Shown here one piece after another: positions 3,369 to 55,709 of a stretch of DNA of 64,000 nucleotides; positions within the stretch are counted from its first letter, which is position 1, and each line of letters opens with the position of its first letter. A model generated the notes under the pieces. That model was not told the DNA's origin, searched no databases, and saw only the letters and a list, made by a program, of their open reading frames with translations. The translations under genes and the position numbers were made by a program. Source of the DNA: Octopus bimaculoides (lineage: Eukaryota); the NCBI RefSeq assembly GCF_001194135.2, contig NC_068994.1, positions 43,816,144-43,880,143 on the forward strand, read 5' to 3'.

Positions 3369-3519
3369 CAGGAATTTCTTCATAAGGACTCATATCCTTT
3401 TTATTCTGACTGCTATTTTGCAGTTTATGAGGAGATACATTGCTGCCATAGTGATCAGGAGTTGCAATGAACCTTCTTTCATGTCTTCCAGATGTCATTC
3501 CAACTTCTTGAATACAAGC
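3369..3519 (-). CDS. Pcdh: Candidate downstream cytoplasmic exon of the protocadherin (151 nt, phase 0 to phase 1): ACIQEVGMTSGRHERRFIATPDHYGSNVSPHKLQNSSQNKKDMSPYEEIP
   Basis: Acceptor tgatatctgtcttcttag|G at 3520|3519 and donor CCTG|GTGAGT at 3369|3368. Only phase 0 is open (the other two frames stop early), matching the phase-0 donor at 53328. It lies in non-repetitive sequence. Too short for the ORF track. Confidence 0.75.
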
Positions 3520-4554
3520 CTAAGAAGACAGATATCAAACATGTAGCTTTTTTACAATTGAAATATATTCATAAATAGCTAAGGTATGTATTTGTATTCT
3601 TAGGTGTGCTTGGTGCACATCACACACCCACAAATGTCATGAAATGATTGATGATTTAATAAATTTGTTGTAAGTAAATTACATATTTGCAATTTATTAC
3701 AACTTTTGCATAATGTTTAGAAAGATGCTATTCATAATCCATGAATAGATGCTAATATTTATTGAAATCTCCTGCATTATATATAATATAATATAATATA
3801 ATATAACATAATATAATTTGCTGTCATTACCAGAAGTACCATAGTTTCATGGTAAACTCTCACAGTGTGCTTAATCTCCATTGTGAGATCAATTCCTGGT
3901 TGAGCCACTCCCTTTCAAGTACTCTGCAATTTCTTATCGTGATCAATAGCTTGGAAAGGTTAAAACATGATATGATGTTTTTATAAATACATTTGAGAAT
4001 ACCACTACATAATGTTCATCACACCCAGTTTAGTTCCCAAGGTACAGAATATTAGTTATAATCATGGAATTAGGAACTCACAGCCAGGCATGCTTTTTCT
4101 AAGATCATTGGTAAAGTGAATGAAATAGCAATGACTTGTAATTGAATCTACAACTTTTACCACCACCACTCTGGAAGCAGCATTTGAATTACTTGAATGG
4201 TAAATTGCTAGTTTATCACTTTAGTTAAATACCCTTATCACCTAATATTTTTGTATAATAGTGACCTTAAGTTTTGACTTCGAACAATGATAGAAACCTC
4301 TTATATTTGAAGGGTGCATTGGTTTAAATGTAATCTAATATGGTTCATTAAAAAGTTTTATCAAATATATGAAAAAAAAAAAAAAACGAAAATATATTTA
4401 TTGTGAAAATGTAATTACAAATACTTTTAAAGTAAGACACAAAAAATGTAAACCAATAGGTTTATACACACACATAAACACACATAATGAATAATATAAT
4501 ACAAAAATATTTCTACTATAGACTCAGGGCCTGAAATAAATATACTACAATAAA

Positions 4555-7465: not shown

Positions 7466-9484
7466 CTAGCTAGCTAGCCACTACACATTCTTTATTTTCT
7501 CTCTTTGTTTCTTTCTGTGTTCCTTTCTGTGGGAGAGCATAGGCTCAAAATGTTAAAGACTTTTTCACTTCCCCAAGCGTTAAACTAATACATCTGCTTG
7601 TTGTCTACACCACCTGTCTTTGTTTTTTGTTCTTTTGTGAATTCTCCCCCTATATACACATATATATGTATATATACATACATATATATGTATATATACA
7701 TAAGCACTATTCATGTGCGAGTCGCTGCCAGTGCTGCCTGACTGGCTCCCCATGCTGGTGGCACATAAAAAGCACCATCCAAATGTGGTTGATGCCAGAC
7801 TCCCCTCCCCCGCCCCAACTGGCTCCCCTGCCGGTGGCACGTAAAAAGCACCCACTGCACTCTCATAGACACATACATGCATATATATATATCTATGATG
7901 GGCTTCTTTCAGTTTCTGTCTACCAATCACAAGGCTTTAGTTGGCCTGAGGCTATAGTGGATGACACTTGCTCAAGGTGCCACACAGTGAGACCAAACCT
8001 AGAACCACGTGGTTGGGAAGCAAGCTTCTTACCGCACAGCCACACCTGCACCTATATGGTCACAATATTTTACTTCTTTTTTTATTGCTTGGTTGGAGGA
8101 GAAAAAAAATGGTACCCACTGTCCCTGCCCCCACTTTTCTTCTTTTCATTGGAACCTCTGAGTTTCTGAGGAAGAGAGGAAGTCAGGTTCAGACTGGTGA
8201 CCTTAACTGAATTGATTGAGTATAAGCTTGTATGATCAACACTGAAAGGGATGGGAAGTAAAAAAAAAACAATAGCAACAATAACAACAACAACAACAGC
8301 AACAACATTTACAGTCAGCATGCATATGAAGTACAAATCTCAGTTAACATAATCCCCATTAAAATTCTTCTTTCTCACTGAATCTTTAAAAACATAAAAG
8401 AGCTACCATCTTATTACCACCAACATCACCCTCATCATCATCATCATCATCATCATCACCCTCATCATCATCATCATCATCATCATCATCACCTTCATCA
8501 TCACTACCACCACCACTACCACCACCACCACCACTATCATCATCATTGAGGTCGTCATTGTCATCGTCCGTCACCCTCATCACCATCACCACCACCACCA
8601 CCATCACCATCATCATCATTAAGAATCACTATTAAAATAAAGGAAATACACATAAATTCCAGGAAGCAGAAATCCATTCCCTGATAGCAAGTTTGCCAAC
8701 AAAAATAGTCTTGATGAAAAACACCCACTTCATTAGAAAGAGAATGAAACAGTATATTCTAAGCTTCCTAATTGTATTACAATTTGCTCATTTGTAAGGA
8801 AACTTCCAGAAAGTTTATGAATACTACTAAATTGGAAGTGTAAAAATATCAAGTGCTATATCATCAGACTTAAACAACATCAGAAAAATTCATCTGCTTA
8901 CTCAATGCAGAAATCAAAAAGTTTCTACAAAAATGACTAATGAAACAGAATAATTTTCCAAACATACTTCAGATATAAGGCATTCCTCTTCATTATGACA
9001 TTATTTGGAAAATATTGTTGGGACTTTCCAACAGTTATCAAATATACTAAATATTTTAATTGAAATACAGATATTAAAAGAAAAAAAATTTTTTTTCAAC
9101 ATGATGGAAAATAGAGATTTACCATTGTAAATTTTAATTTCTTTCTGCTTATTGATTGACCATGAGTCTACAGTGTCCTGCTGTTGTTGTTATTGTTGTT
9201 TTTATTGTTGTTGTTGTTGTTGTTTCTATTACTGTTGTTGCTGATGTTTTCACTAGTTGTGGCATTATTATTTTACATGAATAAACACAATGGTTAATGC
9301 CACTAAATTCTTTTACAGTAATTATGGTTGAGAGGTAGAAACTTACATAGGAAGACAATAGATCATATTAGACATGAATTTCAAAGAAGTTTTATGTATC
9401 TATATATAGCAGGGCTTGGCTCATCAGCTCCTGACTCACCAGCTCTGGTCAAACTGTCCAGCCCATAGATAATGATAATTATCA

Positions 9485-9900: not shown

Positions 9901-11321
9901 GTATAATATATATATAGACCAATATAGACCAATAGAATAAGTGCCATGTTTAACAAGAATTAAGTATTGGGGTCAATTCATTTGACTAAAAATTCTTCAA
10001 GGCAGTGCCCCAACATGGCCACAGTCTAATCACAAAAACAAGAAAAAGGTAAAAGATATATATATTAGTATTTGATAACAGTTTGATTCATCTTGATGCA
10101 ACTTAAAGTTTCATAATTTGGGCATGCAAATATAACTCTTCAGACCCAATTACCTGAGCCTGGAAAGCTAGGCTCTTGTGGTGAGTTCTACGAAACTTTA
10201 AGCTACATGGAGTTGAATCAATCTGTTATTAGATAATAATATATGTAGTTCCACCAAATATTTTGAGTGCCTTTCTTTCATTTGTCCACTCAATCAAATA
10301 TATACACACGTTTATGTGTGTGTATGTATTCTATTATTCTTTTAATCTTTTGTTTCTTTCAGTCATTTGACTGCAGCCATGCTGGAGCACCGCCTTTAGT
10401 CAAACAAACTGATCCCAGGGCTTATTCTCTGTAAGCCTTGTACTTATTCTATCGGTCTCTTTTGCCAAACTGCTATGTTACAGGGATGTAAACACACCAA
10501 CACCGGTTGTCAAGCAATGGTGAGGGAACAAACACAGACACAAAAACGTACACTCATGAACACACCCACACACACACACACACACACACATATAAACGAC
10601 AGGCTTCTTTCAGTTTCCACCTAGCAAATCCACTGACAAGGCTTTGGTCGGTCCAAGGCTATAGTAGAAGACACTTGCCCAAGGTGCCACACAGTGGGAC
10701 TGAAGCTGGAACCATGTGGTTGATGAACAAGCTACGTACCACACAGCCACTCACACAAACACATAGAGCACATACATACACATATATATATATATATGTA
10801 CACATTGTACTCCAATAATTTTGGGTTTCTAACTGGTTTTGGATACGATAACTGTTCACAGTGGAAATACCACAAATAATTCACTGAGCTGTAGAATGAT
10901 TTGTGGATAGAAGCCAATGTATTTCTTTTGTTGCCATTTGCAGAGAGAAATTAGGAGAGTAGCTAGTAGGATGTTGTCCATTGTTCTATAAAAATATTTG
11001 TGTACATACATGCATGTGTATTTATGTATGTATTCATCATTTTTTTTTTTTTTTTCTAATCTGTCTTTGAGAGGTAGAGACAATATTGTAATTAGGATTA
11101 GCTTTAGAATTTAGGACTAAAGAAGAAAGATGTTATTTTTTGAAGTTTATTTAAAGCTTACCAGCATGAGTTTCCACCATGTAGTTAATCCTTAGATAAA
11201 CTTATAACGTAGAAAAAAAAAAATCTATAATTTCAATGCTAATACTTATTACAGTATTCTCTCTACCTCACAAAAATAGAAAATGAGTAAAATAAACTCG
11301 CAAAAGCATNNNNNNNNNNTA

Positions 11322-11364
<43 letters not shown>

Positions 11365-11406
11365 TATATATATATATACATGCATGCATACATACATACA
11401 TACATG

Positions 11407-11439
<33 letters not shown>

Positions 11440-11695
11440 TATATATATATATATACATGCATGCATACATACATACATACATGTATATATATATATACAT
11501 ATGTTATATGCATGCAATTACTCTAGAGAACAATGAAATGCATGCTACCTGCAGCAGAGATGGAACTGAGCTGGAATAATAAACATCACCCACAATTCGA
11601 TTTTATGCATGCATATATATATATACATATACGTGTGTGTGTGTGAGTCAGGCGTATACATAAAGCATGCATAATTTATAATATGGAAATGCATA

Positions 11696-12115
11696 GGCGT
11701 AGGAGTGGCTGTGTGGTAAGTAGCTTGCTTACCAACCACATGGTTCCGGGTTCAGTCCCACTGAGTGGCACCTTGGGCAAGTGTCTTCTACTATAGCCTT
11801 GGGCCGACGAAAGCCTTGTGAGTGGATTTGGTGGACGGAAACTGAAAGAAGCCTGTCGTATATATGTATATATATATATTTGTGTGTGTGTGTATGTATA
11901 TTTGTGTGTCTGTGTTTATCACCCCAACATCGCTTGACAACCAATGCTTGTGTGTTTACATCCCCGTAACTTAGCGGTTTGGCAAAAGTGACCGATAGAA
12001 TAAGTACTAGGCTTACAAAAAATAAGTCCTGGAGTCGATTTGCTCAACTAAAGGCGGTGCTCCCAGCATGGCCGCAGTCAAATGACTGAAACAAGTAAAA
12101 GAGATAAAAGAGATA
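11696..12115 (+). mobile_element. Full-length tRNA-derived CORE-type SINE (family B) with an internal (TA/TG)n tract
   Basis: A/B-box-like head GGAGTGGCTGTGTGGTAAG..GGTTCAGTCCC, CORE-like CACCTTGGGCAAGTGTCTT, tail GACTGAAACAAGTAAAAGAG. About 20 copies or fragments in the window, e.g. 10340-10750(-), 13240-13632(-), 34190-34605(-), 41350-41770(+), 41787-42120(+), 47545-47940(-), 51365-51800(+), 59175-59620(+). Confidence 0.9.
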
Positions 12116-12460
12116 TACATATATATATGTATATATATACACATATATATACATATATATATACATAAAAACTACCTTTCTTTCCTTCTCTGAGCATCTG
12201 CTAATACTTTGCATGTACCATGTCCTCGGGTTGTAATTTTTTTTTCTTGTGTGTGTTCTTAATTTTTTTTTGATTTACTATTTACTGCATGCTCACACGG
12301 ACCCCCAGCCTTCCAGCTGACTTTGGAGTACCTAATTCGCGGGATTCTTTTTACCATCAGATTACATTACTTTGTTCATTCGGAACATGTATGTGTGTAT
12401 GTATGTATATTTATATGTATAGATATAGATATAATACATATATGTATTTGTATCTCTTTC

Positions 12461-12860
12461 TCTTTTCTCTTTTACTTGTTTCAGTCATTTGACTGCGGCC
12501 ATGCTGGAGCACCGCCTTTAGTCGAGTAAATCGACCCGAGGACTTATTCTTTGTAAGCCTAGTACTTATTGTATCAGTCTCTTTTGCTAAACCGCTAAGT
12601 TACGGGGACGTAAACACACCAGCATCGGTTGTCAAGCAATTTTGGGGGGAGACAAACACAGACACATAAACACACAAACATACATATGTATATATACATA
12701 TATAAATGACAGACTTCTTTCAGTTTCCGTTTACCAAATCCACTCACAAAGTTTTGGTCGGCCTGAGGCTATAGTAGAAGACGCTTGCCCAAGGTGCCAC
12801 ACAGTGGAAATGAATCCGGAACCATGTGGTTGGTAAGCAAGCTACTTACCACACAGCCAT
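12461..12860 (-). mobile_element. Full-length family B SINE, inverted relative to 11696-12115
   Basis: Reverse complement of the family B consensus along its whole length. Confidence 0.9.
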
Positions 12861-15297
12861 ACAGATAGACACACAGATTTTTTTCGCCTCCACCAGAGTC
12901 AATATTATATATTAACTTTATATAAATATCAATATATATTAAATATTAACCTTATCTAAAGCATACATATAATATAAAACTACTGAGGTATCTAATAGAT
13001 TGTGCAGGTGTTTATTTTTGTCTTTATAAATAATGTTTTTAATAGGACATTAGTTATTAATGTATTTGACAAAATACTTTATGCTTTTGAGTTATTGTCT
13101 TTTACATTCTGAATTCAAAACCTACATATGTCAAGATTACCATTTAGCCTTCTGGGTTTGTTGAAATAAGTATCAGTCAAATACTGGCATTGATTTAATG
13201 AACTGTTTCCTTCCCCAGAATTCGTGGCATTGTAGTTATTTTACTCTTTACTCTTTTACTTGTTTCAGTCATTTGACTGTGGCCATGCTGGAGCACCGCA
13301 TTTGGCCGAGCAAATCGACCCCAGGACTTATTCTTTGTAAGCCTAGTACTTATTCTAGAGGTCTCTTTTGCCAAACAGCTCAGTTACGGGGACGTAAACA
13401 CACCAGCATCTGTTGTCAAGCGATGTTGGGGGGACAAACACAGACACACAAACATATACACACACATACATATATATATATATATACATATATACGACGG
13501 GCTTCTTTCAGTTTCCGTCTACCAAATCCACTCACAAGGCTTTGGTCGGCCCGAGGCTATAGTAGAAGACGCTTGCCCAAGGTGCCACACAGTGGGACTG
13601 AACCCGGAACCATGTGGTTGGTAAGCAAGCTACTTACCACACAGCCACTCCTATGCCTCATTATTAATATTATAACTAGGGCAAAGGCAGTGAGCCAGCA
13701 GAATCATTAGCATGCTGGGCAAAATGCTTAGCGGAATTTCGACTGTCTTTTGTTCTGAGTTCAAATTCTGCTGTGGTCGACTTTGCCCGTCTTCCTTTCA
13801 TGGTCGATAAAAGAAAGTACCAGTTGAACTCTGGTGTTGATGTAGTCATCTTATTTCCTCCTCAAAACCTCCTACCCTTGTGCCAAACTTTGGAACCAAT
13901 ATTAAAAGTAGGGCAAAGGCAAGCTCAGTGATAGATTTGGTAAAGCACTAGACCAAAGAAGTTCTTGTAGTCAGTTACAAGGTTTAGCAGTTTAAATTAA
14001 AATCTTCTTGAGGTGAGTTTTTTTCCTTTCATTTTCTCAGAGTCAATAAAATTATATATTAATGAAATGAAGCGATTAATATAATACCCCAATAGGTACC
14101 TTGTGCTGATATTAGAAATGAATATTAATACTATTATCATAAGTTTTTCCTGTTCTGTCAATTTTGTTTCCATTTTTGCTAAGTGTCTTCTTGACACCTA
14201 GGGCAAAGAAACTTATTGTATACATCGAGAGGTCATTAAAATAAACTCACCAGATTGTTCGTTTACAAAATCAAATAAAATCATGAAGGAAAATAAACAT
14301 TATTTACATGGAAGGTTATCATTCTCACACTGACAATGCTCTTCTCAATACACATGGCATACTAGTTAAAACAATTTTTTTTGCCATTCTTGCAGGGCTG
14401 GTCAGCCAGGGATCATTCTCAAATAATAATAATAATAATAATAAAAAGTAGCAGCAAAAGAATGAGAACTCAATATTGGATAAATAGAGGATTATTTATG
14501 TTATAATTTAGAACAGTAAAATGATATACGTATGTATATATGCGGGAGTGTGAATGTATGCCTGTATATAGGCTTCCATACAGTTTCGATCAACCAAAGT
14601 CCACACTCACAAGGTGTTTGTTGACCCAGGACAATAGTAGAAGATATTTGCCTAAGGTGTCATGCAGTGGAACTGAACCTGCAACCATGTAGCTGCAAAG
14701 CAAACCACCTGGCAACATAGTCATGAGAATGTTCTTTTTCACTCTAGGCACAAGGCCCGATATTTTGGGGGAGGGCATCAGTCAATTACATCGACCCTAG
14801 TATACAAATGGTACTTAATTTATCAACCCCGAAAGGATGAAAGGCAAGGTCAACCTCAGTAGAATTTGAACTCCGATAGTCATGAAAATATTAACTCAAC
14901 AAACCAATTTTTTCACCTCTAAAGAAAGAAGTAAAAAAATACAAAAAATAAACATGGGCTTCTCTCAGACTTACTCATAGAAATTCTCTTTTGATTTGCA
15001 TATTCTCTCTATCTGTGGCTCTAAGCAGTTGCAGTGCATTTAAAATAATGGGATTCATTCAGTATTTGCTATGTTACAGGTTCAATTCTATATGATTTCC
15101 TGTTAGGTTTGCTGATAATAGCACCCCATACATAAAGATTATTTTGTCTAGAAGGACTTCAAATGGGTTTCATTTTTATAAGGTATTTCTCAACTTTTCA
15201 GTAATGAGATATTTACATTGGAATACACAGTTATGTATGCATGATATATATATTAACAAAAACTCATTTATATACACAAAACCCATCACTCACATAT

Positions 15298-15330
<33 letters not shown>

Positions 15331-16305
15331 CAAACACACTGATATATTAAAAAGTATCCATGAATTACAATCTCAGTATAAAATGCTAATGTCTGTGCAT
15401 ATGTATGTTTGCGTGTGTGTTAAAGTGTGCGTGTGTGCTAAAGTGTGCGTGTGTGTGTGTNNNNNNNNNNNNNNNNNNNNNNNNNNNNNNNNNNNNNNNN
15501 NNNNNNNNNNNNNNNNNNNNNNNNNNNNNNNNNNNNNNNNNNNNNNNNNNNNNNNNNNNNNNNNNNNNNNNNNNNNNNNNNNNNNNNNNNNNNNNNNNNN
15601 NNNNNNNNNNNNNNNNNNNNNNNNNNNNNNNNNNNNNNNNNNNNNNNNNNNNNNNNNNNNNNNNNNNNNNNNNNNNNNNNNNNNNNNNNNNNNNNNNNNN
15701 NNNNNNNNNNNNNNNNNNNNNNNNNNNNNNNNNNNNNNNNNNNNNNNNNNNNNNNNNNNNNNNNNNNNNNNNNNNNNNNNNNNNNNNNNNNNNNNNNNNN
15801 NNNNNNNNNNNNNNNNNNNNNNNNNNNNNNNNNNNNNNNNNNNNNNNNNNNNNNNNNNNNNNNNNNNNNNNNNNNNNNNNNNNNNNNNNNNNNATATACA
15901 CATACATATATACACAGACATACATATGCATATATGTTTATTGAAGGTAGATATATGTGTGCTATTCATCTATGAATGCATACATACACACATACTCTCT
16001 CTCTCTCACACACACACATACACACACATGCACACACACATATTTATTTATATTTATATATTTATATAATGTGCATGCTATTATGATCATGACTGTGTGT
16101 ATGTGTGTGTGTGTGTGTGCATATGAGTATGCATACCTATGCATGTGTATGTGTGTGTGAGAGAGAGAGAGAAAGTAAGAGAGAGAGAAAGTAAGAGAGA
16201 GAGAAAGAGATCTTGTACATACACAAATATACAATTTCCATAGCCACAAACATAATCAGGTATATGAAAATGGAAAAATATTGTAGAAAAAGAATAAAAA
16301 GAAAT

Positions 16306-19582: not shown

Positions 19583-20109
19583 ATATATGTATATGTATAG
19601 AGTAATAAGGATTCAGATAGAACTGCACCAAGTAGGGTTGGATAAACCTGTGGTCACTTTTTACTTTCCTTTATTTTTTATCCTACTTTATCTTCGGTCC
19701 TCTCCCAGCTACCCATTTTTCTGAGCCTAGTATAATAAAATATCACCTACACCCCATCTCTAGCCTCTTAAAGAACCAGTCTAGTTGACTCCTTTTTCAC
19801 ACTGACCACTGACCATAAATATCATATTACACCCTTTCACAAACTAAATTCTTAACCTAACTCCACCGCTTAATGACCACAACAGCCAATTTTGTGGGTC
19901 ATTCTCCCATTTCATGGTAAGCCTCAACAGACTTCAGCTATGTCCCTGCTGTATTCTTCATATATTCTTTTGTTTTTGAAATTATGTTTCGTCTTATGAT
20001 TATGGTTTTTTGCAAAGAAGTAATATTCTCATTCTTCTATTTAAAAAATGTATAAGAAGCAGCTGTAATGAGCTGACAATTATTCATCATTTGTTATTAT
20101 TCATTTGAG

Positions 20110-20154
<45 letters not shown>

Positions 20155-20982
20155 NNNNNNNNNNNNNNNNNNNNNNNNNNNNNNNNNNNNNNNNNNNNNN
20201 NNNNNNNNNNNNNNNNNNNNNNNNNNNNNNNNNNNNNNNNNNNNNNNNNNNNNNNNNNNNNNNNNNNNNNNNNNNNNNNNNNNNNNNNNNNNNNNNNNNN
20301 NNNNNNNNNNNNNNNNNNNNNNNNNNNNNNNNNNNNNNNNNNNNNNNNNNNNNNNNNNNNNNNNNNNNNNNNNNNNNNNNNNNNNNNNNNNNNNNNNNNN
20401 NNNNNNNNNNNNNNNNNNNNNNNNNNNNNNNNNNNNNNNNNNNNNNNNNNNNNNNNNNNNNNNNNNNNNNNNNNNNNNNNNNNNNNNNNNNNNNNNNNNN
20501 NNNNNNNNNNNNNNNNNNNNNNNNNNNNNNNNNNNNNNNNNNNNNNNNNNNNNNNNNNNNNNNNNNNNNNNNNNNNNNNNNNNNNNNNNNNNNNNNNNNN
20601 NNNNNNNNNNNNNNNNNNNNNNNNNNNNNNNNNNNNNNNNNNNNNNNNNNNNNNNNNNNNNNNNNNNNNNNNNNNNNNNNNNNNNNNNNNNNNNNNNNNN
20701 NNNNNNNNNNNNNNNNNNNNNNNNNNNNNNNNNNNNNNNNNNNNNNNNNNNNNNNNNNNNNNNNNNNNNNNNNNNNNNNNNNNNNNNNNNNNNNNNNNNN
20801 NNNNNNNTCTTAATGAATAAAAATTCTTCTGATAGAATAAATGGGTTAATAGAAACCAATGTAGCAAAGAACACAAAATAACTGTGGTTAGCTCCTGTTT
20901 TTAAGGCAGGAACTCCTTGAAATTTTGGGTATTTGAGTATATTTAAGAATTTAAGGATTGGAGAAAATGCATGTTATAATTG

Positions 20983-21081
20983 CATACTTTATTCCTACAT
21001 ATGTTTCAAAGGATTACAACCTGTGTGATCCATAGGGATCTTTGATATTAAAATTGTAACCTTCTCATCAGGGAAAGCATG
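20983..21081 (-). ncRNA. Type-I hammerhead ribozyme (left arm; sense to the protocadherin pre-mRNA)
   Basis: Exact mirror copy of 21162-21260; neither arm mismatch falls inside the ribozyme. Predicted cleavage after the GUA at 20998-20996. Confidence 0.8.
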
Positions 21082-21161
21082 AGAATCATCTTAAACGTAA
21101 GACAATATGACCGATTATGTTTTCATAATCGGTCATAATGTCTTACGTTTAAGATGATTCT

Positions 21162-21260
21162 CATGCTTTCCCTGATGAGAAGGTTACAATTTTAATATCA
21201 AAGATCCCTATGGATCACACAGGTTGTAATCCTTTGAAACATATGTAGGAATAAAGTATG
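21162..21260 (+). ncRNA. Type-I hammerhead ribozyme (right arm of the palindrome)
   Basis: CUGAUGA at 21172-78. Stem II G79-U92 pairs with A21221-U21235 (about 14 bp, one bulge) and encloses the hairpin GAUCC-CUAU-GGAUC. GAAAC at 21236-40, palindromic ACAUAUGU helix III, GUA triplet at 21245-47. Stem I is UUCC/GGAA plus CAUGCU/AGUAUG. AATAAA at 21250-55. Confidence 0.8.
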
Positions 21261-21770
21261 CAATTATAACATGCGTTTTCTCCAATCCTTAAATTCTTAA
21301 ATATATATATATATATATAAATATAATGGGCTTCCACACAATTTCTGTCAATCACCAAATTCACTCAAAAGCCATTGTATTGGCCTGAGCTTATGATAAA
21401 TGACACTTGTCCAAAGTGCCACACAGCAGGACTGAACCCAAAATTACATGGCTGCAAGACAAGCTTCTTAACCATATAACCATACCAGCATCTACCATAT
21501 AGCCATGCTTTGCTCCATTACCATTTATATTTGTTTTGTTATTTTACTAACGTTTTACCTCTAATTTAAATTTTTTCTTTAAGTTAGCAATTCTCAATCT
21601 AGAATGTTATCAAATAAAGATATTCATCTTGCTCTATCATTCCATTTGGCCATCTCCTTCAAACGGTTTAAAAATTTACAAGTAAAATCAACTGACACCT
21701 TATGTGACCAGTCCCTTAATCATAACTTCTGGAATTCCCTAATTCCCATTAACTAACTCTCAAAATATTT

Positions 21771-21900
21771 TTCTATATATCCTCTTTGAAACCTTGCTTC
21801 AATAATCATACTCATACATTTAGAAACCTCCTTAAACGAAGTAATGAAACCTCATTGTCTTGCTTCATCTGGGAACTGAAAAATGAAATTCAACTAATAA
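21771..21900 (+). mobile_element. Decayed GIY-YIG endonuclease fragment of a Penelope-like element
   Basis: Open frame FYISSLKPCFNNHTHTFRNLLKRSNETSLSCFIWELKNE resembles the PLE endonuclease pattern YIG..FK.R.NNH..SF...N.T.LS..IW.LK. Confidence 0.6.
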
Positions 21901-22650
21901 CTTAAAACTGAAGCATTTTGTCAATATTTTATTGGATTTATTTTTTAACCAAGATATCAAGCATATGATTAATTTCTCAAGTTGAGAATTTTAAATATTT
22001 TTTCGTTTATATTGTTTACCTGATTTTTAACTTAATCCAACACTTTTTTGTTTTTAGAGCTAATCTTAAAAGCTTGTTCTTAGTTAATATGTTACCTTAC
22101 ACATTTTTGTTTATAAAAATTGAATATCAGACTCTAGTTTGGTATCTGCAGATATCATTAGCATTTTATTTCTATCTGTATATATAGTTATATATGTAGA
22201 TTTAGCTACATAAGCATACATGTATGGAAAAAAATAATAAGTAGACAACAGATGTGGTGTTCAAAGCTTTATTGGACACACACAGGTTTCATCAAAATGC
22301 CAACATAATTACACAACAGCAGTAGAAATATTATGCAATGATACTTTTCACCTCATCAATGTTTTGCTATAAATGCAACAATCGGTGTTGAAATTCAAAA
22401 TATATACATTACTCCCCATTATGCAAATAACAAACCACCTCTTATGTCACGTATTATTATAATTATATTTTTATAACTATATCTGTAAAAGAGTGAAAAT
22501 ATTTATGAAAATGAAAGCTACCGGACATGAATGGTGCCTATGCTAGAAGTAGATGTCAAATACCTACAATCCACTCTAAAAGTTGTTCTCTAAAATCAAC
22601 CACAGGTACAAACGCAAGGGAATAAGCAAGGAAATATAAAGTTATGGATA

Positions 22651-26285: not shown

Positions 26286-26457
26286 TTAGCTGGAGTCTTA
26301 GTTTATAGCAGAGACTCCAGCTAAGAAGATCTGAAGAAGGAATTGTAATCCCGAAATATCATCGGACTATAGATAACCAAATTACAACAGGTGTACAGTC
26401 CATTTTTTGTTCTATAGTGCATTGTTGTACCATTCTAAACTTTTAATTCTTCACAAA
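26286..26457 (+). mobile_element. PLE-type terminal repeat with minimal hammerhead-like core and a short 5' inverted copy (same family as 46278-46627)
   Basis: 13-bp inverted repeat TTAGCTGGAGTCT/AGACTCCAGCTAA, then CTGAAGA-AGGAATTGTAATCCC-GAAATATC (26331 onward). Sequence closely similar to 46480-46627. Confidence 0.6.
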
Positions 26458-30120: not shown

Positions 30121-30676
30121 TTCTATATTTAAGAGATGAGGAATTATGTACATTATTTGCATTTGACGGATATTTGTCCTCATCTTATTTTTTGGCTGAT
30201 ATACCCTCCAGCCTTCATCAGGTGTCATGGGGAAATTTCGAACCTGGGTTCTCATTCCTAAGGAATTTTTCTATATAATAATAATAATAATAATTATAAT
30301 AATATATACAAATATATATAACATACAGAAAATTGCACTACTGGGCACTGCACACATTCTATGCAAAACACTTTCAATACAGTAACCATAAGAGCATCAC
30401 AGCAAACCACAGCACATACCCAAGGCACACAGAGCTGCGCTCGGTAGTGAAGTGAAAGCACGTTATAAAAATAAAACTACTGAACAATAATAATAATAAT
30501 TTCGAAAAATTCCTTCGGAATGAGAACCCAGGTTTGAAATTTCCCCAAGACACATGATGAAGGCTGGAGGGTATATCAGCTGAAACGTTGTGTTAACAAC
30601 AAACAAGATGAGGACAAATATCCATCGAATGTAAATAATGTAAATAATGTAAATAATGTGTACCATTTCTTCCTCT
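30121..30676. mobile_element. Inverted pair of PLE-type repeats (arms about 30121-30271 and 30504-30676) with decayed hammerhead cores and a Dong fragment in the spacer
   Basis: The arms are reverse complements (gaatgagaacccaggtt.gaaatttcccc...gatgaaggctggagggtatatcagc). Combined consensus: GACAC CUGAUGA AGGCUG..CAGCC GAAAC GUU GUGUU. The right arm has C3 changed to A; the left arm has lost GAAAC. Confidence 0.8.
30307..30485 (+). mobile_element. 3' end of the same Dong/R4-like family, in (AAT)n inside the PLE inverted-repeat spacer
   Basis: Near-identical to 42900-43078; flanked by aataataat on both sides. Confidence 0.9.
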
Positions 30677-41970: not shown

Positions 41971-42500
41971 ACTTTGTGGTTCGGCAAAAGAGACCAATAG
42001 ACTTAGTACTAGACTTACAAAGAATAAGTCCTGGGGTCGATTTCTTTTACTGAAAAACACTGTAAGGCAGTGCTCCAGCATGGCCGCAGTCAAAATAACT
42101 GAAACAAGTAACAGAATAACAGAATATATGTGTCTCTCAATGTGCCTACCTCTGCGCAACAGTATTCTTCCTTTGTTACTTTTCAGATACAGCTTCCACC
42201 ATCCATTACCAATAAATGCTTTTCTGTTTGTTGAAGGCAATGAGCTGGCAGAATCATTGCCACCTTAGGCAAAATGCTTAACAGCATTTCATCCATCTTT
42301 ACGTTCTGAGCTTAAATTCTTTGCCTTTCATAAGACGAAAGGTGAAGTCAACCTCGGTGGAATTTGAACTCAGAATGTAAAGACGGATAACATGCTGTTA
42401 AGCACTTCATCCGGTGTGCTAACAATTCTGCCAGCTCACCACCTTAATAATAATAACAATAATAATATTAATAATAATAATAATGATAATAAGAAGAAGA

Positions 42501-43078
42501 AGCGCTGGGACCTATATACACTGGAAGCTATGCCAACACTATGGAATAACAACAGGAAAAAGATGGTATAAACACACACCAGAAAAGGTCACAGAAAACG
42601 AGAAAGCAACCATACTCTGGGATATGCCAATACACACAGATAGAGAAATTAAGGCAAATAGACCAGATATAGTTGTCAAAGATCATGAAGAAAAAAAATG
42701 CTTTCTAATTGATGTATCAATACCAGCAGATGACAATGTTTCCCTAAAAGAAATGGAGAAGCTTTCAAAATACAAAGACCTGGAAATAGAGGTAACTCGA
42801 ATGTGGAATCTAAAAACAGAAACAATTCCTATCATAGTAGGTGCTTTAGGTATAATAAAAAAAATATTCAGACAAATACATAACAAAAACACCAGAACTT
42901 ACAAATATATATAACATACAGAAAATTGCACTACTGGGCACTGCACACATCCTACGCAAAACACTTTCAATACAGTAACCATAAGAGCATCACAACAAAC
43001 CACAGCACATACCCAAGGCACACAGAGCTGCGCTCGGTAGTGAAGTGAAAGCACGTTATAAAAATAAAACTACTGAAC
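42501..43078 (+). mobile_element. 5'-truncated non-LTR retrotransposon, R4/Dong-like, restriction-like endonuclease (RLE) C-terminus and 3' UTR, embedded in (TAA)n
   Basis: IHWKLCQHYG..WYKHTP..ENE..ILWD..TDREIKANRPDIVV..LIDVSIP..EKLSKYKDL..W..IPIIVGALG, then after a frameshift QKIALLGTAHILRKTLSIQ* (stop 42978). (AAT)n tracts on both sides. Confidence 0.9.
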
Positions 43079-43117
<39 letters not shown>

Positions 43118-44887
43118 GATAATTTCTCAATCATATGTAATATCACTAATTTGTTGGGAAGGATTGTAGGAAGGAAATGTATTACAATTTTCTTTTTATA
43201 TAAAAACCAGTGAAAGCTTTTGATCTCACTTGTAGCCATCTCCAAAGACGAGGTGTTAAGCTAATGTCAGTAGCAGTGAGAAAATGTAAGAACCACAGTG
43301 AATGGCATCACTTCTTTAATAACTTAAGCTGAAGGATGTGAAGGAGTGATTGATTGGCTTAAAGTAGGCTGTCGTGTTTGTGATTGACTGGTGTTTAGAG
43401 TATTGATTACACTGATTGAACTTATCTATATTCAAAGGCATGCTGAGACAATGCTTTTTTTTTTTTTTAAGAAGGTAGGATGAAAGATGGGGGGGGGGGG
43501 GAGATTTAGCTGCTATTTTTAGCAGAATTGTGCAGTTATGTAGTGACTCCTTCACTGACAATGTCATAAAGAGTAAAAGAAAAGTAATGTATAAAGGACT
43601 TTAATCTATGTTCTTAATTTTTTAAATATTTCTATAAATTGCTAATTTTAATGTTTTAATGCTGGAAAATTTTATTTATATTTTGAGTATTTTTTTCATC
43701 AATCATCTTTTACTTGTTTCACTCATTAGACTGCAGCCATACTGGGGCACTACCTTGAAGAATTTTAGTTCAACAACCTCAGTTCTTGTTTATTTATTTA
43801 TTTATTTATTTGTTGAAAACTCGGTTATATTTCTATCAGTCACTCTTGCCAAACCTTTAGGTTACAGGAATGTAAACACACCTACAATGGTTGTCAAGTG
43901 ATGGTAGAGGACAAAACACANNNNNNNNNNNNNNNNNNNNNNNNNNNNNNNNNNNNNNNNNNNNNNNNNNNNNNNNNNNNNNNNNNNNNNNNNNNNNNNN
44001 NNNNNNNNNNNNNNNNNNNNNNNNNNNNNNNNNNNNNNNNNNNNNNNNNNNNNNNNNNNNNNNNNNNNNNNNNNNNNNNNNNNNNNNNNNNNNNNNNNNN
44101 NNNNNNNNNNNNNNNNNNNNNNNNNNNNNNNNNNNNNNNNNNNNNNNNNNNNNNNNNNNNNNNNNNNNNNNNNNNNNNNNNNNNNNNNNNNNNNNNNNNN
44201 NNNNNNNNNNNNNNNNNNNNNNNNNNNNNNNNNNNNNNNNNNNNNNNNNNNNNNNNNNNNNNNNNNNNNNNNNNNNNNNNNNNNNNNNNNNNNNNNNNNN
44301 NNNNNNNNNNNNNNNNNNNNNNNNNNNNNNNNNNNNNNNNNNNNNNNNNNNNNNNNNNNNNNNNNNNNNNNNNNNNNNNNNNNNNNNNNNNNNNNNNNNN
44401 NNNNNNNNNNNNNNNNNNNNNNNNNNNNNNNNNNNNNNNNNNNNNNNNNNNNNNNNNNNNNNNNNNNNNNNNNNNNNNNNNNNNNNNNNNNNNNNNNNNN
44501 NNNNNNNNNNNNNNNNNNNNNNNNNNNNNNNNNNNNNNNNNNNNNNNNNNNNNNNNNNNNNNNNNNNNNNNNNNNNNNNNNNNNNNNNNNNNNNNNNNNN
44601 NNNNNNNNNNNNNNNNNNNNNNNNNNNNNNNNNNNNNNNNNGGACGTAATTCAATACTGCAAGGAACTTAGTAACCACTATCTACCTCTTCTGTTTTCAA
44701 CTAGTTTGTTCTAGATAGTTTATAAATTGATGTTTTCATGTTAAGGATTTTCTGTTCCGTTTCCAATGATAAATAGGGGAAGAGTTGTTCCCCTTTAAAT
44801 ATTTATTGATTTTCATGTGTGTGTGCGCGTGTGCGTGTACATGCTCGCACAAATATCTATCTATCTCTCTCTCTATCTATCTATCTC

Positions 44888-46277: not shown

Positions 46278-46627
46278 TTGTAAATAATAAAAAGTCTTGA
46301 ATGGTACAACAATGCACTATAATACAAAAAATTGGATTATATTCCTGTTGTAATTTAGTTATCCATAGTCCAATGATATTTCAGAATACAATTCCTTCTT
46401 CAGATATTCTTAGATGGAGTTGCTGCTATAATCTGTTTTCCAACGGCTTTTCTTTTTTCGGAAGCGTCTCAGCAATGGTAGCGACTCCATCTAAGAATAT
46501 CTGACGAAGGAATTGTATTCCGAAATATCATCGGACTATGGATAACTAAATTACAACAGGTATATAGTCCATCTTTTTGTATTATAGTGCATTGTTGTAC
46601 CATTCAAAACTTTTTCATTCTTTACAA
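46278..46627. mobile_element. Inverted repeat (arms 46278-46424 and 46480-46627, 55-bp spacer) with minimal hammerhead-like cores facing outward
   Basis: 8 differences over the 126-bp core counted by eye. Plus arm: CTGACGA A GGAAT-TGT-ATTCC GAAA TATC at 46501-46529. Minus arm: CTGAAGA core at 46403-46397. Confidence 0.85.
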
Positions 46628-52782: not shown

Positions 52783-53327
52783 CACATATACACACATATT
52801 TTGTGTGTGTAGGTGGACACAAACTGTGTGGAAGATTTTGCGTGTGGTCATGCGTGTGTGTGTATTTGCGTGTGCATGTGTCTGTGTATGCATGTGTGTA
52901 TGTGTGTGTTTTTTTTTTTGTTTTACTTGTGTTTGTTCTGCCACCACTTGACAAGTGGTGGTGGCTTGTTTACAACCTCGTAACTTAGCAGTTTAGTGAA
53001 AAAGATTGATAGAATAAGTATCAGTCTTAAAAAGAAAAGAGAAAAGAGAAAAAGTACTGGGAGAGATTTCTTTGACTAAACCCTTCAAGGCAGTGCCACA
53101 TTATGGCTGCAGTCCAATGAGTGAAACAAGATAAAAGATAAAAGATAAAAGACGACATATTCTAGATGTCTCTGCATCAAGGACCACCAATGTAACATCA
53201 TTCTTTTTACATTCTTGTATCAAAAGTAAACATTCAAACATAAATAAAATGCATTCATTGAGATACAAAAACACAGTATGTTATCTGAAGTTTACATATC
53301 ACAGATTAATAATAGAAATGAATTTAC

Positions 53328-55709
53328 CTGAGAAGCAGAAAGTCTTTTCCCAGGTGATGTTAATGACGTCCATTCAACAGGTAGCTCCTGCTCTGGACAG
53401 AAATCCCTTCTGGATCTCATTGATGGTGTACTGTGATGCACCCCTTCTTCGGGGTTCTGTGTTATAGCAAAAGGATTGTTACTCTGAGATATCATTAAAC
53501 ATTTCTCTCGTCCTGGTTGCATGGCTGGATTCATTGCTGCTGTATGTAACATATTTCTCCTTCTGTTACATCTCACTATACATATCGTTATTATAACAAC
53601 TATAGCAATTGATATCACTACAGCTGTAACAACTATGATAATGACCAAGTTGATATCTATCATGTCACTAGATTGGATGTGAGCAGCTGTCAGCATTGGG
53701 GATGTTCTGTTGCTGACAGTTAGTGTTAAGGACAGTGTAGTGGTTGCTGACAGCACTGGGCTGCCACTGTCTTTCACAACTAACAGAAGGTTGTATGACC
53801 CGGCATCATTTTGGTAAACTGGCCGAGAGAAAGCTAACACTCCAGAATGGGGATTAATGGTAAATAATTGTTTATTATTGCCTGCCAAAATTAAAAATGT
53901 AAGGAAAGCATTTTCCCGACTGTCTCTATCTGAAGCTCTCAGAACTGTGATGTCATTTTTGCTTTGTGGGTGATAATGGACATCTAGGCTGAAAGGGTTA
54001 ACACTAGGAAATGTGAAGTATGGTGCATTATCATTCTCATCCATGACTTCAACAATAATGTTTGCTGTACTGTTCAGTGATGGTGTTCCGTTATCACTGA
54101 CAGCCACTTTAAATACATATGATTTAGATTGTTCTCTGTCCAGTGCCTTGGTCGTTGATAAGAAGCCATAGTTTGTAATTTGAAAAGGTACTGGATATTT
54201 ATTATCATTTATTACAGAAAACAAAAGCTGACCACCGTCACCCAAATCTGGATCTGTGGCATTGATGAACCCAACAGGGAAATTTGGTTCCTCATTCTCA
54301 TAAGTCAAAAACTTAAACGTATCTTTAGTGAAGTGAGGCTGTACATCATTGACATCTATCACTTGAATGGAAAACTTTCTCTCTGTCCATAATGGTGGTG
54401 ATCCTTTATCTTGGCAAGAAATTTTAATACTATAATGGTCTTGTTTTTCTCTGTCAACTTCTTTTTTAATTATTATTTTATATTCATTTGAACCTAGATT
54501 CAAAAGTTGAAATTTCTCACTATTTAAAGTACAGTGTACCTCACCATTCAAGCCAACATCTTTATCAATAACACTGACATAAGCAATGAAGCTGCCTACT
54601 TTCATTCCTTCCGATATTGCTGCAATATTCTTTTGTACTTCAGAGACAAAATTCACATCAATCTCAGGAGCATTGTTCTGTTGATTGATTAAGTTTACTA
54701 GAACAGTTGCAATGGAACTTAATGGAGGATTTCCTCCATCTTTTGCTTCCACAAATAGTTTATAATTCCTTAATTGCTCTGAGAAAAATCTCTGTAATAA
54801 AAATATCTCACCTGTTTTATCATTTAATTTGAAATTATGTTTTGCAATATCAGATGTCTTGGAACTAAAATGATATGTTATTTTACTATTTTCTTTTGAA
54901 TCTCTATCTTTGGCAGATAAAACCACAACTGGCATGGGCCTCTGGTGGGAATGTTTTATTGTAACATTGTACACTTCTTGAGTGAACACAGGGGCATTAT
55001 CATTAATATCTAGAACAGTTATATGAACATCTAAGACCCCTTGCAAAGGAGGGGAGCCTCCATCTTTTGCAATAACTTGAAGGTAATAGTCCGACACAGA
55101 TTCACGATCCAGTGTCTCACCTAAGACTATGTCTAGTTTAGATGTTCCATCTACTCTTTTGGAAACTGTCAATGAAAATGGTTCGTTTGATTTCTTTAAA
55201 GTATACACTATCTGAGAATTTAAAATACCTACATCTTTGTCAACAGCATTTGGTAAAGATTTCTTTGTACCTTTACCATTTGTTTCATCAAATTTGAGGT
55301 CAATTGCCTTTATAGGAAATCCAGGCTGATTGTCATTTACATCTTTTATCACGATTTTCACTTTTAAAACTTTGATAAAAGTTTGTGCATGACGGAGTGC
55401 AATTTTGATAATGTCAAAACATTCTGTGTTGTAAATACAAAGTGATTCTGCATCTATGGTCTGGATGGTGAATAATTTACCTGTTTTGGTAACATTGAAT
55501 AGTTGGGAACCTCTTGTTGGTCTCTGGGCAAGTTGGTTGAACGTAACAAGGTTTCGATATTTTAAAGATAAAATATTCCACAGTCTTGAGTCAGAAGCAA
55601 TATTTCCAATATAAGTGCCAATGTTCTTTTCCTCTTCAACATGGTAAACTAGATCCACGCATGTGGAACCATGAAGGAATACAAATACGATATATACACA
55701 TAGCCACAT
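53328..55709 (-). CDS. Pcdh: Protocadherin, large ectodomain exon (signal peptide, 6 EC repeats, TM, juxtamembrane tail); 794 codons up to the splice donor
   Basis: 805-aa ORF (53292-55709). Signal peptide MWLCVYIVFVFLHGSTC. Cadherin linker motifs DVNDNQP, DINDNAP, NQQNNAP, DVNDVQP, DENDNAP, with DRE and DGGxPPL motifs. TM LVIIIVVTAVVISIAIVVIITICIV followed by RCNRRR. Start context gaaaccATG. Upstream acceptor tttattttctttttcag|A (exon starts 55743). Donor CAG|GTAAAT at 53328|53327 in phase 0, so the ORF-track tail VNSFLLLICDM is probably intron read-through. Confidence 0.97.

What the first reader, a model, noticed from the sequence alone, without database searches (positions are those of the whole stretch)
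20938..21305. 368-bp palindrome in a protocadherin intron encodes an intact hammerhead ribozyme on each strand, each preceded by its own antisense copy
Seen: 182-bp arms with only 2 mismatches and a 4-nt loop. Each arm holds a full type-I hammerhead: CUGAUGA, a long stem II, GAAAC, palindromic ACAUAUGU helix III, GUA cleavage triplet, a 4+6-bp stem I, and AAUAAA just after the cut site. Known: Penelope-like elements carry minimal hammerheads with palindromic loop 3 that can act as dimers, and coleoid cephalopods have very extensive ADAR editing of dsRNA. Inference: in the minus-strand protocadherin pre-mRNA the antisense arm is transcribed first, so the ribozyme and its intronic AAUAAA would be trapped in a 182-bp duplex. 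That is a self-silencing ribozyme and an ideal ADAR substrate. Editing or unwinding of the duplex could release cleavage or intronic polyadenylation, which would remove the cytoplasmic exon and truncate the receptor.
Basis: partly seen in the sequence, partly recalled or inferred. Interest (0 to 1): 0.9.

Follow-up and report, generated by a model that had tools for sequence, protein, structure and literature searches.

The report
Fold-back hammerhead retroelement insertion, octopus intron
A short mobile element carrying a hammerhead ribozyme landed in a TA-repeat inside an Octopus bimaculoides protocadherin intron, and its first 182 bases were also copied in reverse, giving a near-perfect hairpin; this looks like an ordinary by-product of Penelope-type retrotransposition, not a purpose-built switch.

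Summary
Arms 20938-21119 and 21124-21305 are 182 nt with 2 mismatches and a TTTT loop, and each strand carries a complete type-I hammerhead core. The site lies in a ~50-kb intron of an O. bimaculoides protocadherin gene on the minus strand.

The palindrome is not a symmetrical unit. The "left flank" (20808-20937) continues the same repeat: the minus-strand copy (21119→20808, 312 nt) matches another copy, L003:62166-62337, at 84.5% across the arm boundary. The right arm is an inverted duplicate of only the first 182 nt. It ends where a TA-rich patch of the element merges with the (TA)n tail of a SINE.

A diverged relative (L003:22849) keeps 18 of 19 ribozyme core positions against 54% identity elsewhere, and has compensatory changes in helices I and II. 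Neither relative has an inverted partner.

Best reading: a 5′ fold-back or inversion made during insertion of a hammerhead-bearing, Penelope-type non-autonomous retroelement into a TA microsatellite.

In the pre-mRNA the region folds as one hairpin (−310 kcal/mol), a generic dsRNA/ADAR substrate. The editing-released ribozyme or poly(A) switch is unsupported: AAUAAA occurs at chance frequency, and hammerheads of this kind need a second copy to cleave.

The parts
20938..21119 (-). Left arm. It is positions 1-182 of the sense copy of the repeat element, with the hammerhead in sense on the minus strand, the same strand as the protocadherin pre-mRNA.
20808..20937 (-). Continuation of the same element copy (positions 183-312). 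It had been taken for unique flank, and it runs into the assembly gap.
   Evidence: Element positions 118-289 match L003:62166-62337 at 84.5% over 174 nt, E 1e-47. Three-way alignments.
21120..21123 (.). 4-nt loop (TTTT) at the fold-back point. It sits 48 nt upstream of the hammerhead C3.
21124..21305 (+). Right arm. It is an inverted duplicate of element positions 1-182 only. It ends in the element's internal TA-rich patch (..CTTAAATATA), which merges with the flanking (TA)n.
20983..21081 (-). Hammerhead motif of the sense copy. Helix I 5' strand starts at 21081, CUGAUGA is at 21071-21065, GAAACAUAUGU is at 21007-20997, and cleavage falls after 20996.
21162..21260 (+). Identical hammerhead motif in the inverted duplicate. 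C3 is at 21172, GAAAC at 21236, and cleavage falls after 21247.
21302..21327 (.). (TA)9 and TA-rich stretch. It is the target microsatellite and the 3' tail of the adjacent SINE-like repeat.
   Evidence: Other copies of the SINE-like repeat carry TA repeats at the same end.
21328..21494 (-). SINE-like repeat on the minus strand whose TA tail received the insertion.
   Evidence: Several 68-77% identical copies elsewhere in L001. tRNA-like boxes are seen by eye only; ARAGORN is negative.
20110..20807 (.). (TA)n at 20110-20154 followed by a 653-N assembly gap at 20155-20807. This is the presumed position of the element's TA-rich 3' end and the other half of the target microsatellite.
   Evidence: The relatives end in TA-rich sequence, and L003:62166 also runs into a gap there. 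Inferred, not seen.
53328..55709 (-). Protocadherin exon 1 (ectodomain, transmembrane segment and start of the tail). It is upstream of the intron.
   Evidence: Pfam Cadherin x5 plus Cadherin_2. 100% identical to O. bimaculoides isoforms.
3370..3528 (-). Next exon (cytoplasmic, aa 792-844 of isoforms X1/X2). It is downstream of the intron.
   Evidence: tblastn.

Best explanation
The locus is one insertion of a short, non-coding, hammerhead-bearing retroelement. The element belongs to a dispersed O. bimaculoides family and is probably mobilised by Penelope-like-element (PLE) machinery. It inserted into the (TA)n tail of a SINE inside a protocadherin intron, in the same orientation as the host gene.

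At insertion, the nascent cDNA reached a point 48 nt upstream of the ribozyme core, either the RNA's 5' end or a stall site. One of two things then happened. Either the cDNA folded back on itself with a 4-nt loop and was copied for 182 nt. Or the second target strand's (TA)n end primed on the element's internal UAUAUUUAA patch and ran off at the same 5' end. In both cases the inverted segment was joined to the other side of the break through TA microhomology.

The product is a 368-bp near-perfect palindrome attached to a longer, asymmetric element copy.

The hammerhead is a conserved part of the element's own life cycle, most likely processing of element transcripts and requiring two copies to act. 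It is not a device of the host gene.

For the host, the only expected consequence is a long intronic RNA hairpin that will be hyper-edited or diced like thousands of other inverted repeats in this genome.

Shown: the structure, the family membership, conservation of the ribozyme core, and dominance of the hairpin fold. Inferred: the RT-mediated origin, the PLE dependence, and the lack of host function.
For: 1. Family membership. The minus-strand copy 21119→20808 matches L003:62166-62337 (84.5%, E 1e-47) across the arm boundary. It also aligns with L003:22801-23143.
2. Asymmetry. Only positions 1-182 are duplicated in inverted orientation. The duplicate ends exactly at a TA-rich patch abutting (TA)9 and a SINE, and (TA)n also lies beyond the gap on the other side.
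3. The inverted arm is not a family feature. Neither L003 copy has an inverted partner.
4. The arms are equal to within 4 nt, with a 4-nt loop, and differ at 2 of 182 positions. This fits a single young event. A rough age is ~1.5 My, using the distance-to-time calibration in PMC13282606.
5. The ribozyme is constrained. Between the element and the diverged copy, 18 of 19 core positions are identical against 54% elsewhere, and the one change is at the permissive H17. RNAalifold recovers helix I and the base of helix II, with 4 pairs kept through changes on both sides and G·U→G-C at 10.1-11.1.
6. Copy L003:62166 is 5'-truncated next to (TG)n(TA)n, as expected of a retroelement.
7. Literature on insertion structure. 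PLE insertions are heavily 5'-truncated, often have an inverted 5'-truncated copy adjacent, and several clades prefer (TA)n (PMC8557442).
8. Literature on mechanism. Purified PLE protein cleaves and extends both target strands (PMC11167929). Dual min-HHRs 100-700 bp apart on opposite strands have been reported (PMC4209133). PLEs were recently active in Octopus (PMC13282606).
9. A second hammerhead-bearing family in the same intron also sits as a head-to-head pair, at 30271-30143(-) and 30502-30651(+).
10. The hairpin is -310.5 kcal/mol against about -20 for the ribozyme fold.
Against: - No PLE reverse transcriptase or GIY-YIG remnant was found in 493 kb of sampled O. bimaculoides DNA with a genuine PLE protein probe. 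The link to PLEs therefore rests on the ribozyme type, the insertion signatures and the literature, not on a shared 3' end with an autonomous element.
- Only three family loci were found, so the element's true 5' and 3' ends are not defined. The 3' end of this copy lies in an assembly gap.
- Classical PLE inverted copies retain the element's 3' end, whereas this inverted arm stops at an internal TA patch.
- The 57-59-nt helix II is atypical for PLE min-HHRs.
- The palindrome could not be checked in an independent assembly. The newer assembly reuses the same contigs and gaps.
Confidence: 0.68

Rival explanations
1. A DNA-level rearrangement arose after an ordinary 5'-truncated insertion. For example, fold-back repair of a double-strand break or replication template switching at the TA microsatellite duplicated 182 bp in inverted orientation.
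For: The outer junction of the inverted arm lies in TA microhomology. TA microsatellites are fragile and self-complementary. The structure alone cannot distinguish an RT-mediated origin from a DNA-repair origin.
Against: The fold-back point coincides with the 5' end of the retroelement copy. That is where RT run-off or snap-back is expected and where PLE insertions typically carry inverted copies (PMC8557442). A second hammerhead family shows the same head-to-head layout, which suggests a link to the insertion process.
Confidence: 0.12
2. The palindrome is an assembly artefact: a short-read graph path turned back on its reverse complement near a contig end, and only one arm exists.
For: The palindrome lies 130 bp from a 653-N gap. 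The assembly is short-read based, and the newer chromosome-scale version keeps identical contigs and gaps. PLE-type structures are known to trouble short-read assemblies (PMC8557442).
Against: The arms differ at two positions. The two outer ends continue into different sequence: element continuation on one side, (TA)n plus SINE on the other. A simple hairpin artefact would be perfectly symmetric to the contig end.
Confidence: 0.08
3. The hairpin has been co-opted as a source of small RNAs (hpRNA, endo-siRNA or miRNA-like) or as an ADAR sponge in neurons. This would be independent of the ribozyme.
For: A 182-bp near-perfect intronic hairpin sits in a neurally expressed gene family. Generic miRNA-precursor models score weakly on it. 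Octopus has very high dsRNA editing (PMC5625713).
Against: The Rfam hits are far below gathering scores and reflect only hairpin shape. The window holds 114 other inverted-repeat pairs of at least 60 nt. The insertion looks young, so conservation is unlikely. No expression data were available.
Confidence: 0.07
4. One reading: an editing- or helicase-gated ribozyme or poly(A) switch that truncates the protocadherin by removing its cytoplasmic exon.
For: The sense hammerhead and an AAUAAA are on the pre-mRNA strand, upstream of the cytoplasmic exon. The duplex would mask both.
Against: There is only one sense copy per transcript, and this ribozyme class is inactive as a monomer and weak as a dimer (PMC4209133, PMC6765202). 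AAUAAA is at chance density, 56 against 56.2 expected. Editing would also damage the core adenosines. The structure is an asymmetric insertion by-product. The short isoforms that could be mapped use other terminal exons, e.g. 46503-46429.
Confidence: 0.02
5. A fold-back DNA transposon or MITE whose terminal inverted repeats happen to contain a hammerhead-like motif.
For: It has palindromic shape. A true MITE-like hairpin family exists in the same window at 46289-46615.
Against: The element continues 130+ nt beyond one arm only. Family copies lack the inverted arm. One copy is 5'-truncated.
Confidence: 0.02

Closest known systems
Penelope-like element (PLE) insertions with an adjacent inverted 5'-truncated copy (Evgen'ev & Arkhipova 2005; Craig et al. 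2021, PMC8557442)
   Same: Hammerhead-bearing retroelement. Head-to-head inverted arrangement with 3' ends outward. 5' truncation in the family. Insertion into a (TA)n microsatellite. No poly(A) tail. Assembly gaps at the site.
   Different: There is no RT/GIY-YIG ORF or pLTR tandem here. The inverted arm stops at an internal TA patch instead of carrying the element's 3' end. The two arms are equal to within 4 nt, which points to snap-back or run-off at one defined 5' end.
PLE min-HHRs, small type-I hammerheads that act as dimers (Cervera & de la Peña 2014, PMC4209133; Lünse et al. 2017, cited in PMC6765202)
   Same: Type I topology, complete catalytic core, a very short palindromic helix III (ACAUAUGU), and occurrence on dispersed truncated copies, sometimes in pairs on opposite strands.
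   Different: Helix II carries a 57-59-nt insert, against 7-8 bp plus a small loop. There is no unpaired nucleotide between A9 and 10.1. This copy has G10.1·U11.1, while the relative has G-C.
Animal non-LTR retrozymes and Schistosoma Sm-alpha SINE-like elements (PMC7229834; bioRxiv 10.64898/2026.07.22.740005)
   Same: Short (a few hundred nt) non-coding elements with a type-I hammerhead, thought to be non-autonomous partners of PLEs.
   Different: Retrozymes are defined by tandem direct repeats and circular RNAs. No tandem arrangement was seen in any of the three copies, and circular RNA could not be tested.
L1 'twin priming' 5' inversions
   Same: An inverted 5' segment is created during target-primed reverse transcription by internal priming from the second target strand through microhomology.
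   Different: In L1 the inverted and direct segments come from adjacent, non-overlapping parts of the RNA. Here the same 182 nt are present twice.
Intronic inverted-repeat dsRNA as ADAR hyper-editing substrates (Porath et al. 2017, PMC5625713)
   Same: A long, nearly perfect intramolecular duplex formed by inverted copies of a repeat in a pre-mRNA. Octopus is the extreme case among the animals surveyed, and lizard Penelope elements are massively edited.
   Different: Nothing distinguishes this hairpin in kind. It is only unusually perfect (99%) and tight (4-nt loop). Editing at this locus was not tested.

Membership tests
Hammerhead ribozyme, type I | Conserved core C3 U4 G5 A6 N7 G8 A9 / G12 A13 A14 / A15.1-U16.1 / H17 in the right order | tested here: met
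   CUGAUGA ... GAAA-CAUAUG-UA on both strands. The chance expectation is 0.0033 per window.
Hammerhead ribozyme, type I | Helices I and II flank the core, with open ends in helix I, and are supported by covariation | tested here: met
   A constrained fold gives a 10-bp helix I and a 14-bp helix II. RNAalifold on two diverged copies reports 4 pairs kept through changes on both sides. With n = 2 the support is modest.
Hammerhead ribozyme, type I | Match to curated covariance models (Rfam Hammerhead_1, _3, HH9, HH10, II) | tested here: inconclusive
   No hit at E<=10. The models also miss a textbook min-HHR control and the relative.
Hammerhead ribozyme, type I | Mg2+-dependent self-cleavage at H17 | not testable with these tools
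   Needs in vitro transcription of monomer, dimer and whole-palindrome constructs.
PLE-type minimal hammerhead (dimeric) | Helix III reduced to 1-3 bp with a palindromic sequence, so that two copies form an extended helix III | tested here: met
   ACAUAUGU is self-complementary and cannot close a stable hairpin as a monomer. The same sequence is found in the diverged relative.
PLE-type minimal hammerhead (dimeric) | Compact helix II (about 6-8 bp), an unpaired nucleotide after A9, and G10.1-C11.1 | tested here: not met
   Helix II is a 57-nt insert, there is no unpaired nucleotide, and this copy has G·U at 10.1-11.1. Two other octopus motifs, L003:101902 and L004:33170, do meet these features.
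Penelope-like element (autonomous) | ORF with a TERT-like reverse transcriptase and a GIY-YIG endonuclease | tested here: not met
   No ORF in or near the element. tblastn with Poseidon_Ac protein finds nothing in 493 kb.
Penelope-like element (autonomous) | Tandem or partial-tandem copies forming pLTRs | tested here: not met
   No direct repeat of the element at any of the three loci.
PLE-mobilised (non-autonomous) retroelement | Insertion signatures: 5' truncation, adjacent inverted 5' copy, microsatellite target, no poly(A) | tested here: met
   compared with the descriptions in PMC8557442 and PMC11167929.
PLE-mobilised (non-autonomous) retroelement | 3' end shared with an autonomous PLE of the same genome | not tested
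   No octopus PLE sequence could be retrieved with the available collections and look-up caps.
Animal non-LTR retrozyme | Tandem direct repeats of 170-400 bp, each with a hammerhead, and circular RNA products | tested here: not met
   No tandem copies. circRNA is not testable here.
tRNA-derived SINE | tRNA-like pol III head | tested here: not met
   ARAGORN finds nothing in 20000-22000. No A or B boxes are visible in element positions 1-60.
Fold-back DNA transposon / MITE | Terminal inverted repeats at both element ends in all copies | tested here: not met
   The element extends 130+ nt beyond one arm only, and the relatives have no inverted arm.

The most novel reading that the evidence does not exclude
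The hairpin acts as a conditional lock on a ribozyme inside a neuronal adhesion-receptor gene. Where ADAR or helicase activity opens the 182-bp duplex, the sense hammerhead, perhaps pairing in trans with RNA from another family copy, or the adjacent AAUAAA, cuts the pre-mRNA upstream of the cytoplasmic exon and yields a tail-less protocadherin.
Probability: 0.02. Interest if true: 0.85.

Novelty: new member of a known kind. Interest (0 to 1): 0.2.

Why it matters
As a regulatory device it would matter a great deal, but the evidence points to an ordinary transposon footprint.

Its modest value is threefold:
- It documents a hammerhead-bearing short retroelement family in octopus with an unusually long helix II, which standard Rfam models miss.
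- The near-perfect, equal-armed fold-back ending in TA microhomology is a clean natural example of how PLE-type retrotransposition creates inverted repeats. It complements the in vitro finding that PLE protein extends both target strands.
- It illustrates where some of the exceptional load of dsRNA-forming inverted repeats in octopus introns, the substrate for its famous hyper-editing, may come from.

Tried and rejected
- Rfam at gathering thresholds and at E<=10, on the whole palindrome and on a single arm: only generic hairpin/miRNA hits. Controls showed Rfam also misses genuine min-HHRs, so the negative was set aside.
- Self-BLAST of the arm in the window and in the 95-kb locus with default words: no other copy. 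A word size of 7 was needed to find the relative.
- Independent assembly. The newer O. bimaculoides chromosome assembly carries the same contigs and gaps. The orthologous genes of O. vulgaris and O. sinensis span more than 100 kb, so no DNA was returned.
- Two metagenome scans: 0 hits, then 3 chance hits without helix II.
- PLE coding remnants. A YxDD / GIY-YIG regex on six-frame ORFs and tblastn with the published Poseidon_Ac protein found nothing.
- Supplements of Craig et al. 2021 with PLE consensus sequences are not held.
- A peptide route to short-read assemblies was rejected because the stop-free segments in the arms are only 31-35 aa.
- An nhmmer profile of three copies found no further members in 493 kb.
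- I first read the structure as two independently 5'-truncated 3' ends joined head-to-head. I dropped this once the left 'flank' proved to be part of the element.
Full report
**1. What is there**

The window is Octopus bimaculoides. An 805-aa ORF at 53292-55709 (-) has five Cadherin domains plus Cadherin_2. Residues 1-794 are 100% identical to O. bimaculoides protocadherin isoforms XP_052829077 and others. The next exon of isoforms X1/X2 maps to 3528-3370 (-). Positions 20938-21305 therefore lie in a ~50-kb intron, on the transcribed minus strand.

The palindrome is exactly as described. The arms are 20938-21119 and 21124-21305, 182 nt each, with 2 mismatches (20968, 21105) and a TTTT loop.

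**2. The hammerhead**

I wrote a descriptor for a type-I hammerhead with a short palindromic helix III. In the whole window, on both strands, it matches only the two arms. C3 is at 21172 (+) and 21071 (-), and cleavage falls after 21247 and 20996. 300 dinucleotide-preserving shuffles give 0.0033 matches per window.

The anatomy is:
- Helix I: about 10 bp with a 3-nt bulge.
- Core: CUGAUGA.
- Helix II: a 57-nt insert of 5 bp, a bulged A, 9 bp and a distal 5-bp hairpin.
- GAAA, then helix III ACAUAUGU, then the triplet GUA.
- Position 10.1-11.1: G·U rather than G-C.

Rfam gives no hammerhead hit. It also fails on a textbook PLE-type min-HHR at L004:33170 and on the relative described below, so this negative carries no weight. 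That agrees with the literature, where such motifs needed a dedicated descriptor (PMC4209133).

**3. The palindrome is one end of a longer repeat copy**

I sampled 493 kb (non-N) of O. bimaculoides DNA around other protocadherin genes: L001-L006, L010 and L011. This turned up two relatives.

- L003:22849-22926 has the same build: CTGATGA-GAAGA, a 59-nt insert, then TCTTC-GAAA-CATATG-TC. It also shares sequence upstream, for example AATGTCTTAC.
- L003:62166-62337 matches the minus-strand sequence 21119→20808 at positions 118-289 with 84.5% identity (E 1e-47). That match runs straight across the arm's outer boundary at position 182/183.

So the 130 bp to the left of the palindrome are not unique flank. 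They are the continuation of the element, which runs into the 653-N gap. Beyond the gap lies (TA)n at 20110-20154.

The right arm is an inverted duplicate of element positions 1-182 only. It ends at the element's internal TA-rich patch (..CTTAAATATA), which merges with (TA)9 at 21302-21319. That (TA)n is the tail of a SINE-like repeat at 21328-21494, whose other copies also carry TA repeats at that end.

Neither L003 copy has an inverted partner. The L003:62166 copy is 5'-truncated next to (TG)n(TA)n. Within the resolution the microsatellite allows (element positions ~118-125), its 5' boundary coincides with the ribozyme cleavage site.

**4. The ribozyme is a conserved part of the element**

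Between this copy and the diverged L003:22849 copy, 18 of 19 core and helix-III positions are identical. The only change, A to C, is at the permissive H17. The rest of the alignment is 54% identical (158/293).

RNAalifold, given no structure, recovers helix I and the base of helix II. Four pairs are kept through changes on both sides, and 10.1-11.1 changes from G·U to G-C. With two sequences this is modest evidence, but it is consistent.

**5. How it most likely arose**

The structure, read on the minus strand, is:

SINE-(TA)n | inverted 182→1 | AAAA | sense 1→312... | gap | (TA)n

This is what a retroelement insertion into a TA microsatellite with a 5' fold-back would leave. There are two routes.
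- The first-strand cDNA snapped back at the template's 5' end and copied itself, until its TA-rich end could pair with the target's (TA)n.
- The second target strand primed on the internal UAUAUUUAA patch and ran off at the same RNA 5' end.

Arms equal to within 4 nt and a 4-nt loop favour a single defined 5' end, and probably snap-back.

The literature describes this class of outcome for Penelope-like elements:
- Insertions are heavily 5'-truncated, often have an adjacent inverted 5'-truncated copy, prefer (TA)n in several clades, and cause trouble for short-read assemblies (PMC8557442).
- Purified PLE protein cleaves and extends both target strands, and hammerhead cleavage is not needed for insertion in vitro (PMC11167929).
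- 'Dual min-HHRs' lying 100-700 bp apart on opposite strands have been seen (PMC4209133).
- PLEs are a recognised and recently active TE order in Octopus (PMC13282606).

The same intron holds a second, unrelated hammerhead-bearing family arranged head-to-head, at 30271-30143(-) and 30502-30651(+). Its intact relative at L003:101902 is a classic min-HHR.

The two arms differ by 1.1%. Using the distance-to-time scale in PMC13282606 (about 0.0036 per My), this suggests roughly 1.5 My. That is younger than the O. bimaculoides / O. vulgaris split (13-33 My), unless gene conversion has homogenised the arms.

**6. What it does**

As the pre-mRNA strand, 20900-21340 folds into one uninterrupted hairpin of -310.5 kcal/mol (z = -40.6). 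The ribozyme fold is worth about -20 kcal/mol. The ribozyme is therefore buried, which is simply what any palindrome does to anything it contains.

Three points count against a gated switch.
- The transcript contains one sense hammerhead only, because the other arm is its antisense. Hammerheads with such a helix III show no detectable cleavage as monomers and only weak cleavage as dimers (PMC4209133, PMC6765202).
- Hyper-editing that loosened the duplex would also convert the essential core adenosines. This is an inference from classical hammerhead mutagenesis.
- AAUAAA occurs 56 times on the pre-mRNA strand of this intron against 56.2 expected from composition, about one per 850 nt.

The hairpin is a plausible ADAR or Dicer substrate, but generically so. 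O. bimaculoides has the highest hyper-editing signal and an exceptional density of near-perfect dsRNA-forming inverted repeats (PMC5625713). This window alone has 114 inverted-repeat pairs of at least 60 nt within 3 kb.

**7. Limits**

- No autonomous PLE sharing this element's 3' end was found. No PLE coding remnant appears in 493 kb. PLE dependence is therefore inferred.
- Only three family loci were found, so the element's ends and copy number are undefined. A very rough extrapolation gives the order of 10^4 copies per genome.
- The palindrome could not be checked in an independent assembly or in sister species.
- An assembly artefact is unlikely, given the two mismatches between the arms and the different sequences beyond them, but it is not excluded.

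**8. Verdict**

The PLE-type hammerhead, the intron location and the duplex trapping are all right. The regulatory-switch interpretation is unsupported.

The locus is a new member of a known kind: a hammerhead-bearing, Penelope-type non-autonomous retroelement insertion with a 5' fold-back. Interest is low to moderate.

Noticed in passing
window 30143-30271 (-) and 30502-30651 (+): Two copies of a different hammerhead-bearing repeat sit head-to-head about 230 bp apart, with 3' ends outward, and each inner end abuts an (AAT)n microsatellite. Their ribozyme cores are degenerate (CAUGAUGA in one; GAAA lost in the other). The relative at L003:101902 has an intact PLE-type min-HHR: CUGAAGA-A-GGCUG..CAGCC-GAAA-CG-UU.
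   Followed up: partly
window 46289-46429 / 46475-46615: A 141-nt-arm hairpin (92% complementary, 45-nt spacer) belongs to a multi-copy MITE-like family. Other copies lie at window 26305-26444 and L003:62536-62747. It overlaps the alternative terminal exon (46503-46429) of the UniProt model A0A0L8G9V2, so that 'exon' may be repeat-derived.
   Followed up: partly
L003:62155-62170: The 5'-truncated family copy begins, within the ~7-nt ambiguity left by the adjoining (TA)n, at the hammerhead cleavage site. That is what a cDNA made on ribozyme-cleaved RNA would look like. With n = 1 it is suggestive only.
   Followed up: partly
L004:33143-33170 (-); window 7498-7643 (+): Another PLE-type min-HHR family: CUGAUGA-A-GAGC-GUAG-GCUC-GAAA-CG-UC. 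It sits between (CT)n and (TA)(TG)n microsatellites, about 100 nt from its 3' end. A 76% identical, core-degenerate copy lies in the window at 7498-7643. Rfam does not detect the intact motif.
   Followed up: partly
window 11695-12063 / 13290-13658 and neighbours 10384-12859: A cluster of long inverted repeats (up to 369 nt, 92% complementary, 1.2 kb apart) lies in the same intron. These are further potential dsRNA-forming structures.
   Followed up: no
window 42423-42911 (+): A 163-aa stop-free segment (143 aa from its ATG at 42483) includes ..ILWDMPIHTDREIKANRPDIVVKDHEEKKCFLIDVSIPADDNV..IPIIVGALG. It has no Pfam hit. From memory it resembles the C-terminal region of some invertebrate retrotransposon ORFs; this was not verified.
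   Followed up: no
window gaps 20155-20807, 43921-44641, 15461-15893 and others: Most assembly gaps seen in the window and in the related loci abut TA or TG microsatellites. The newer chromosome-scale assembly (GCA_001194135.2) keeps identical gap sizes, so it offers no independent check of any local structure.
   Followed up: yes
window 60280-60354 (-): Residues 16-40 of the longest O. vulgaris isoform (CAI9732503, 902 aa) map here at 100% identity. This suggests an upstream 5' coding exon that is absent from the O. bimaculoides models of this gene.
   Followed up: no
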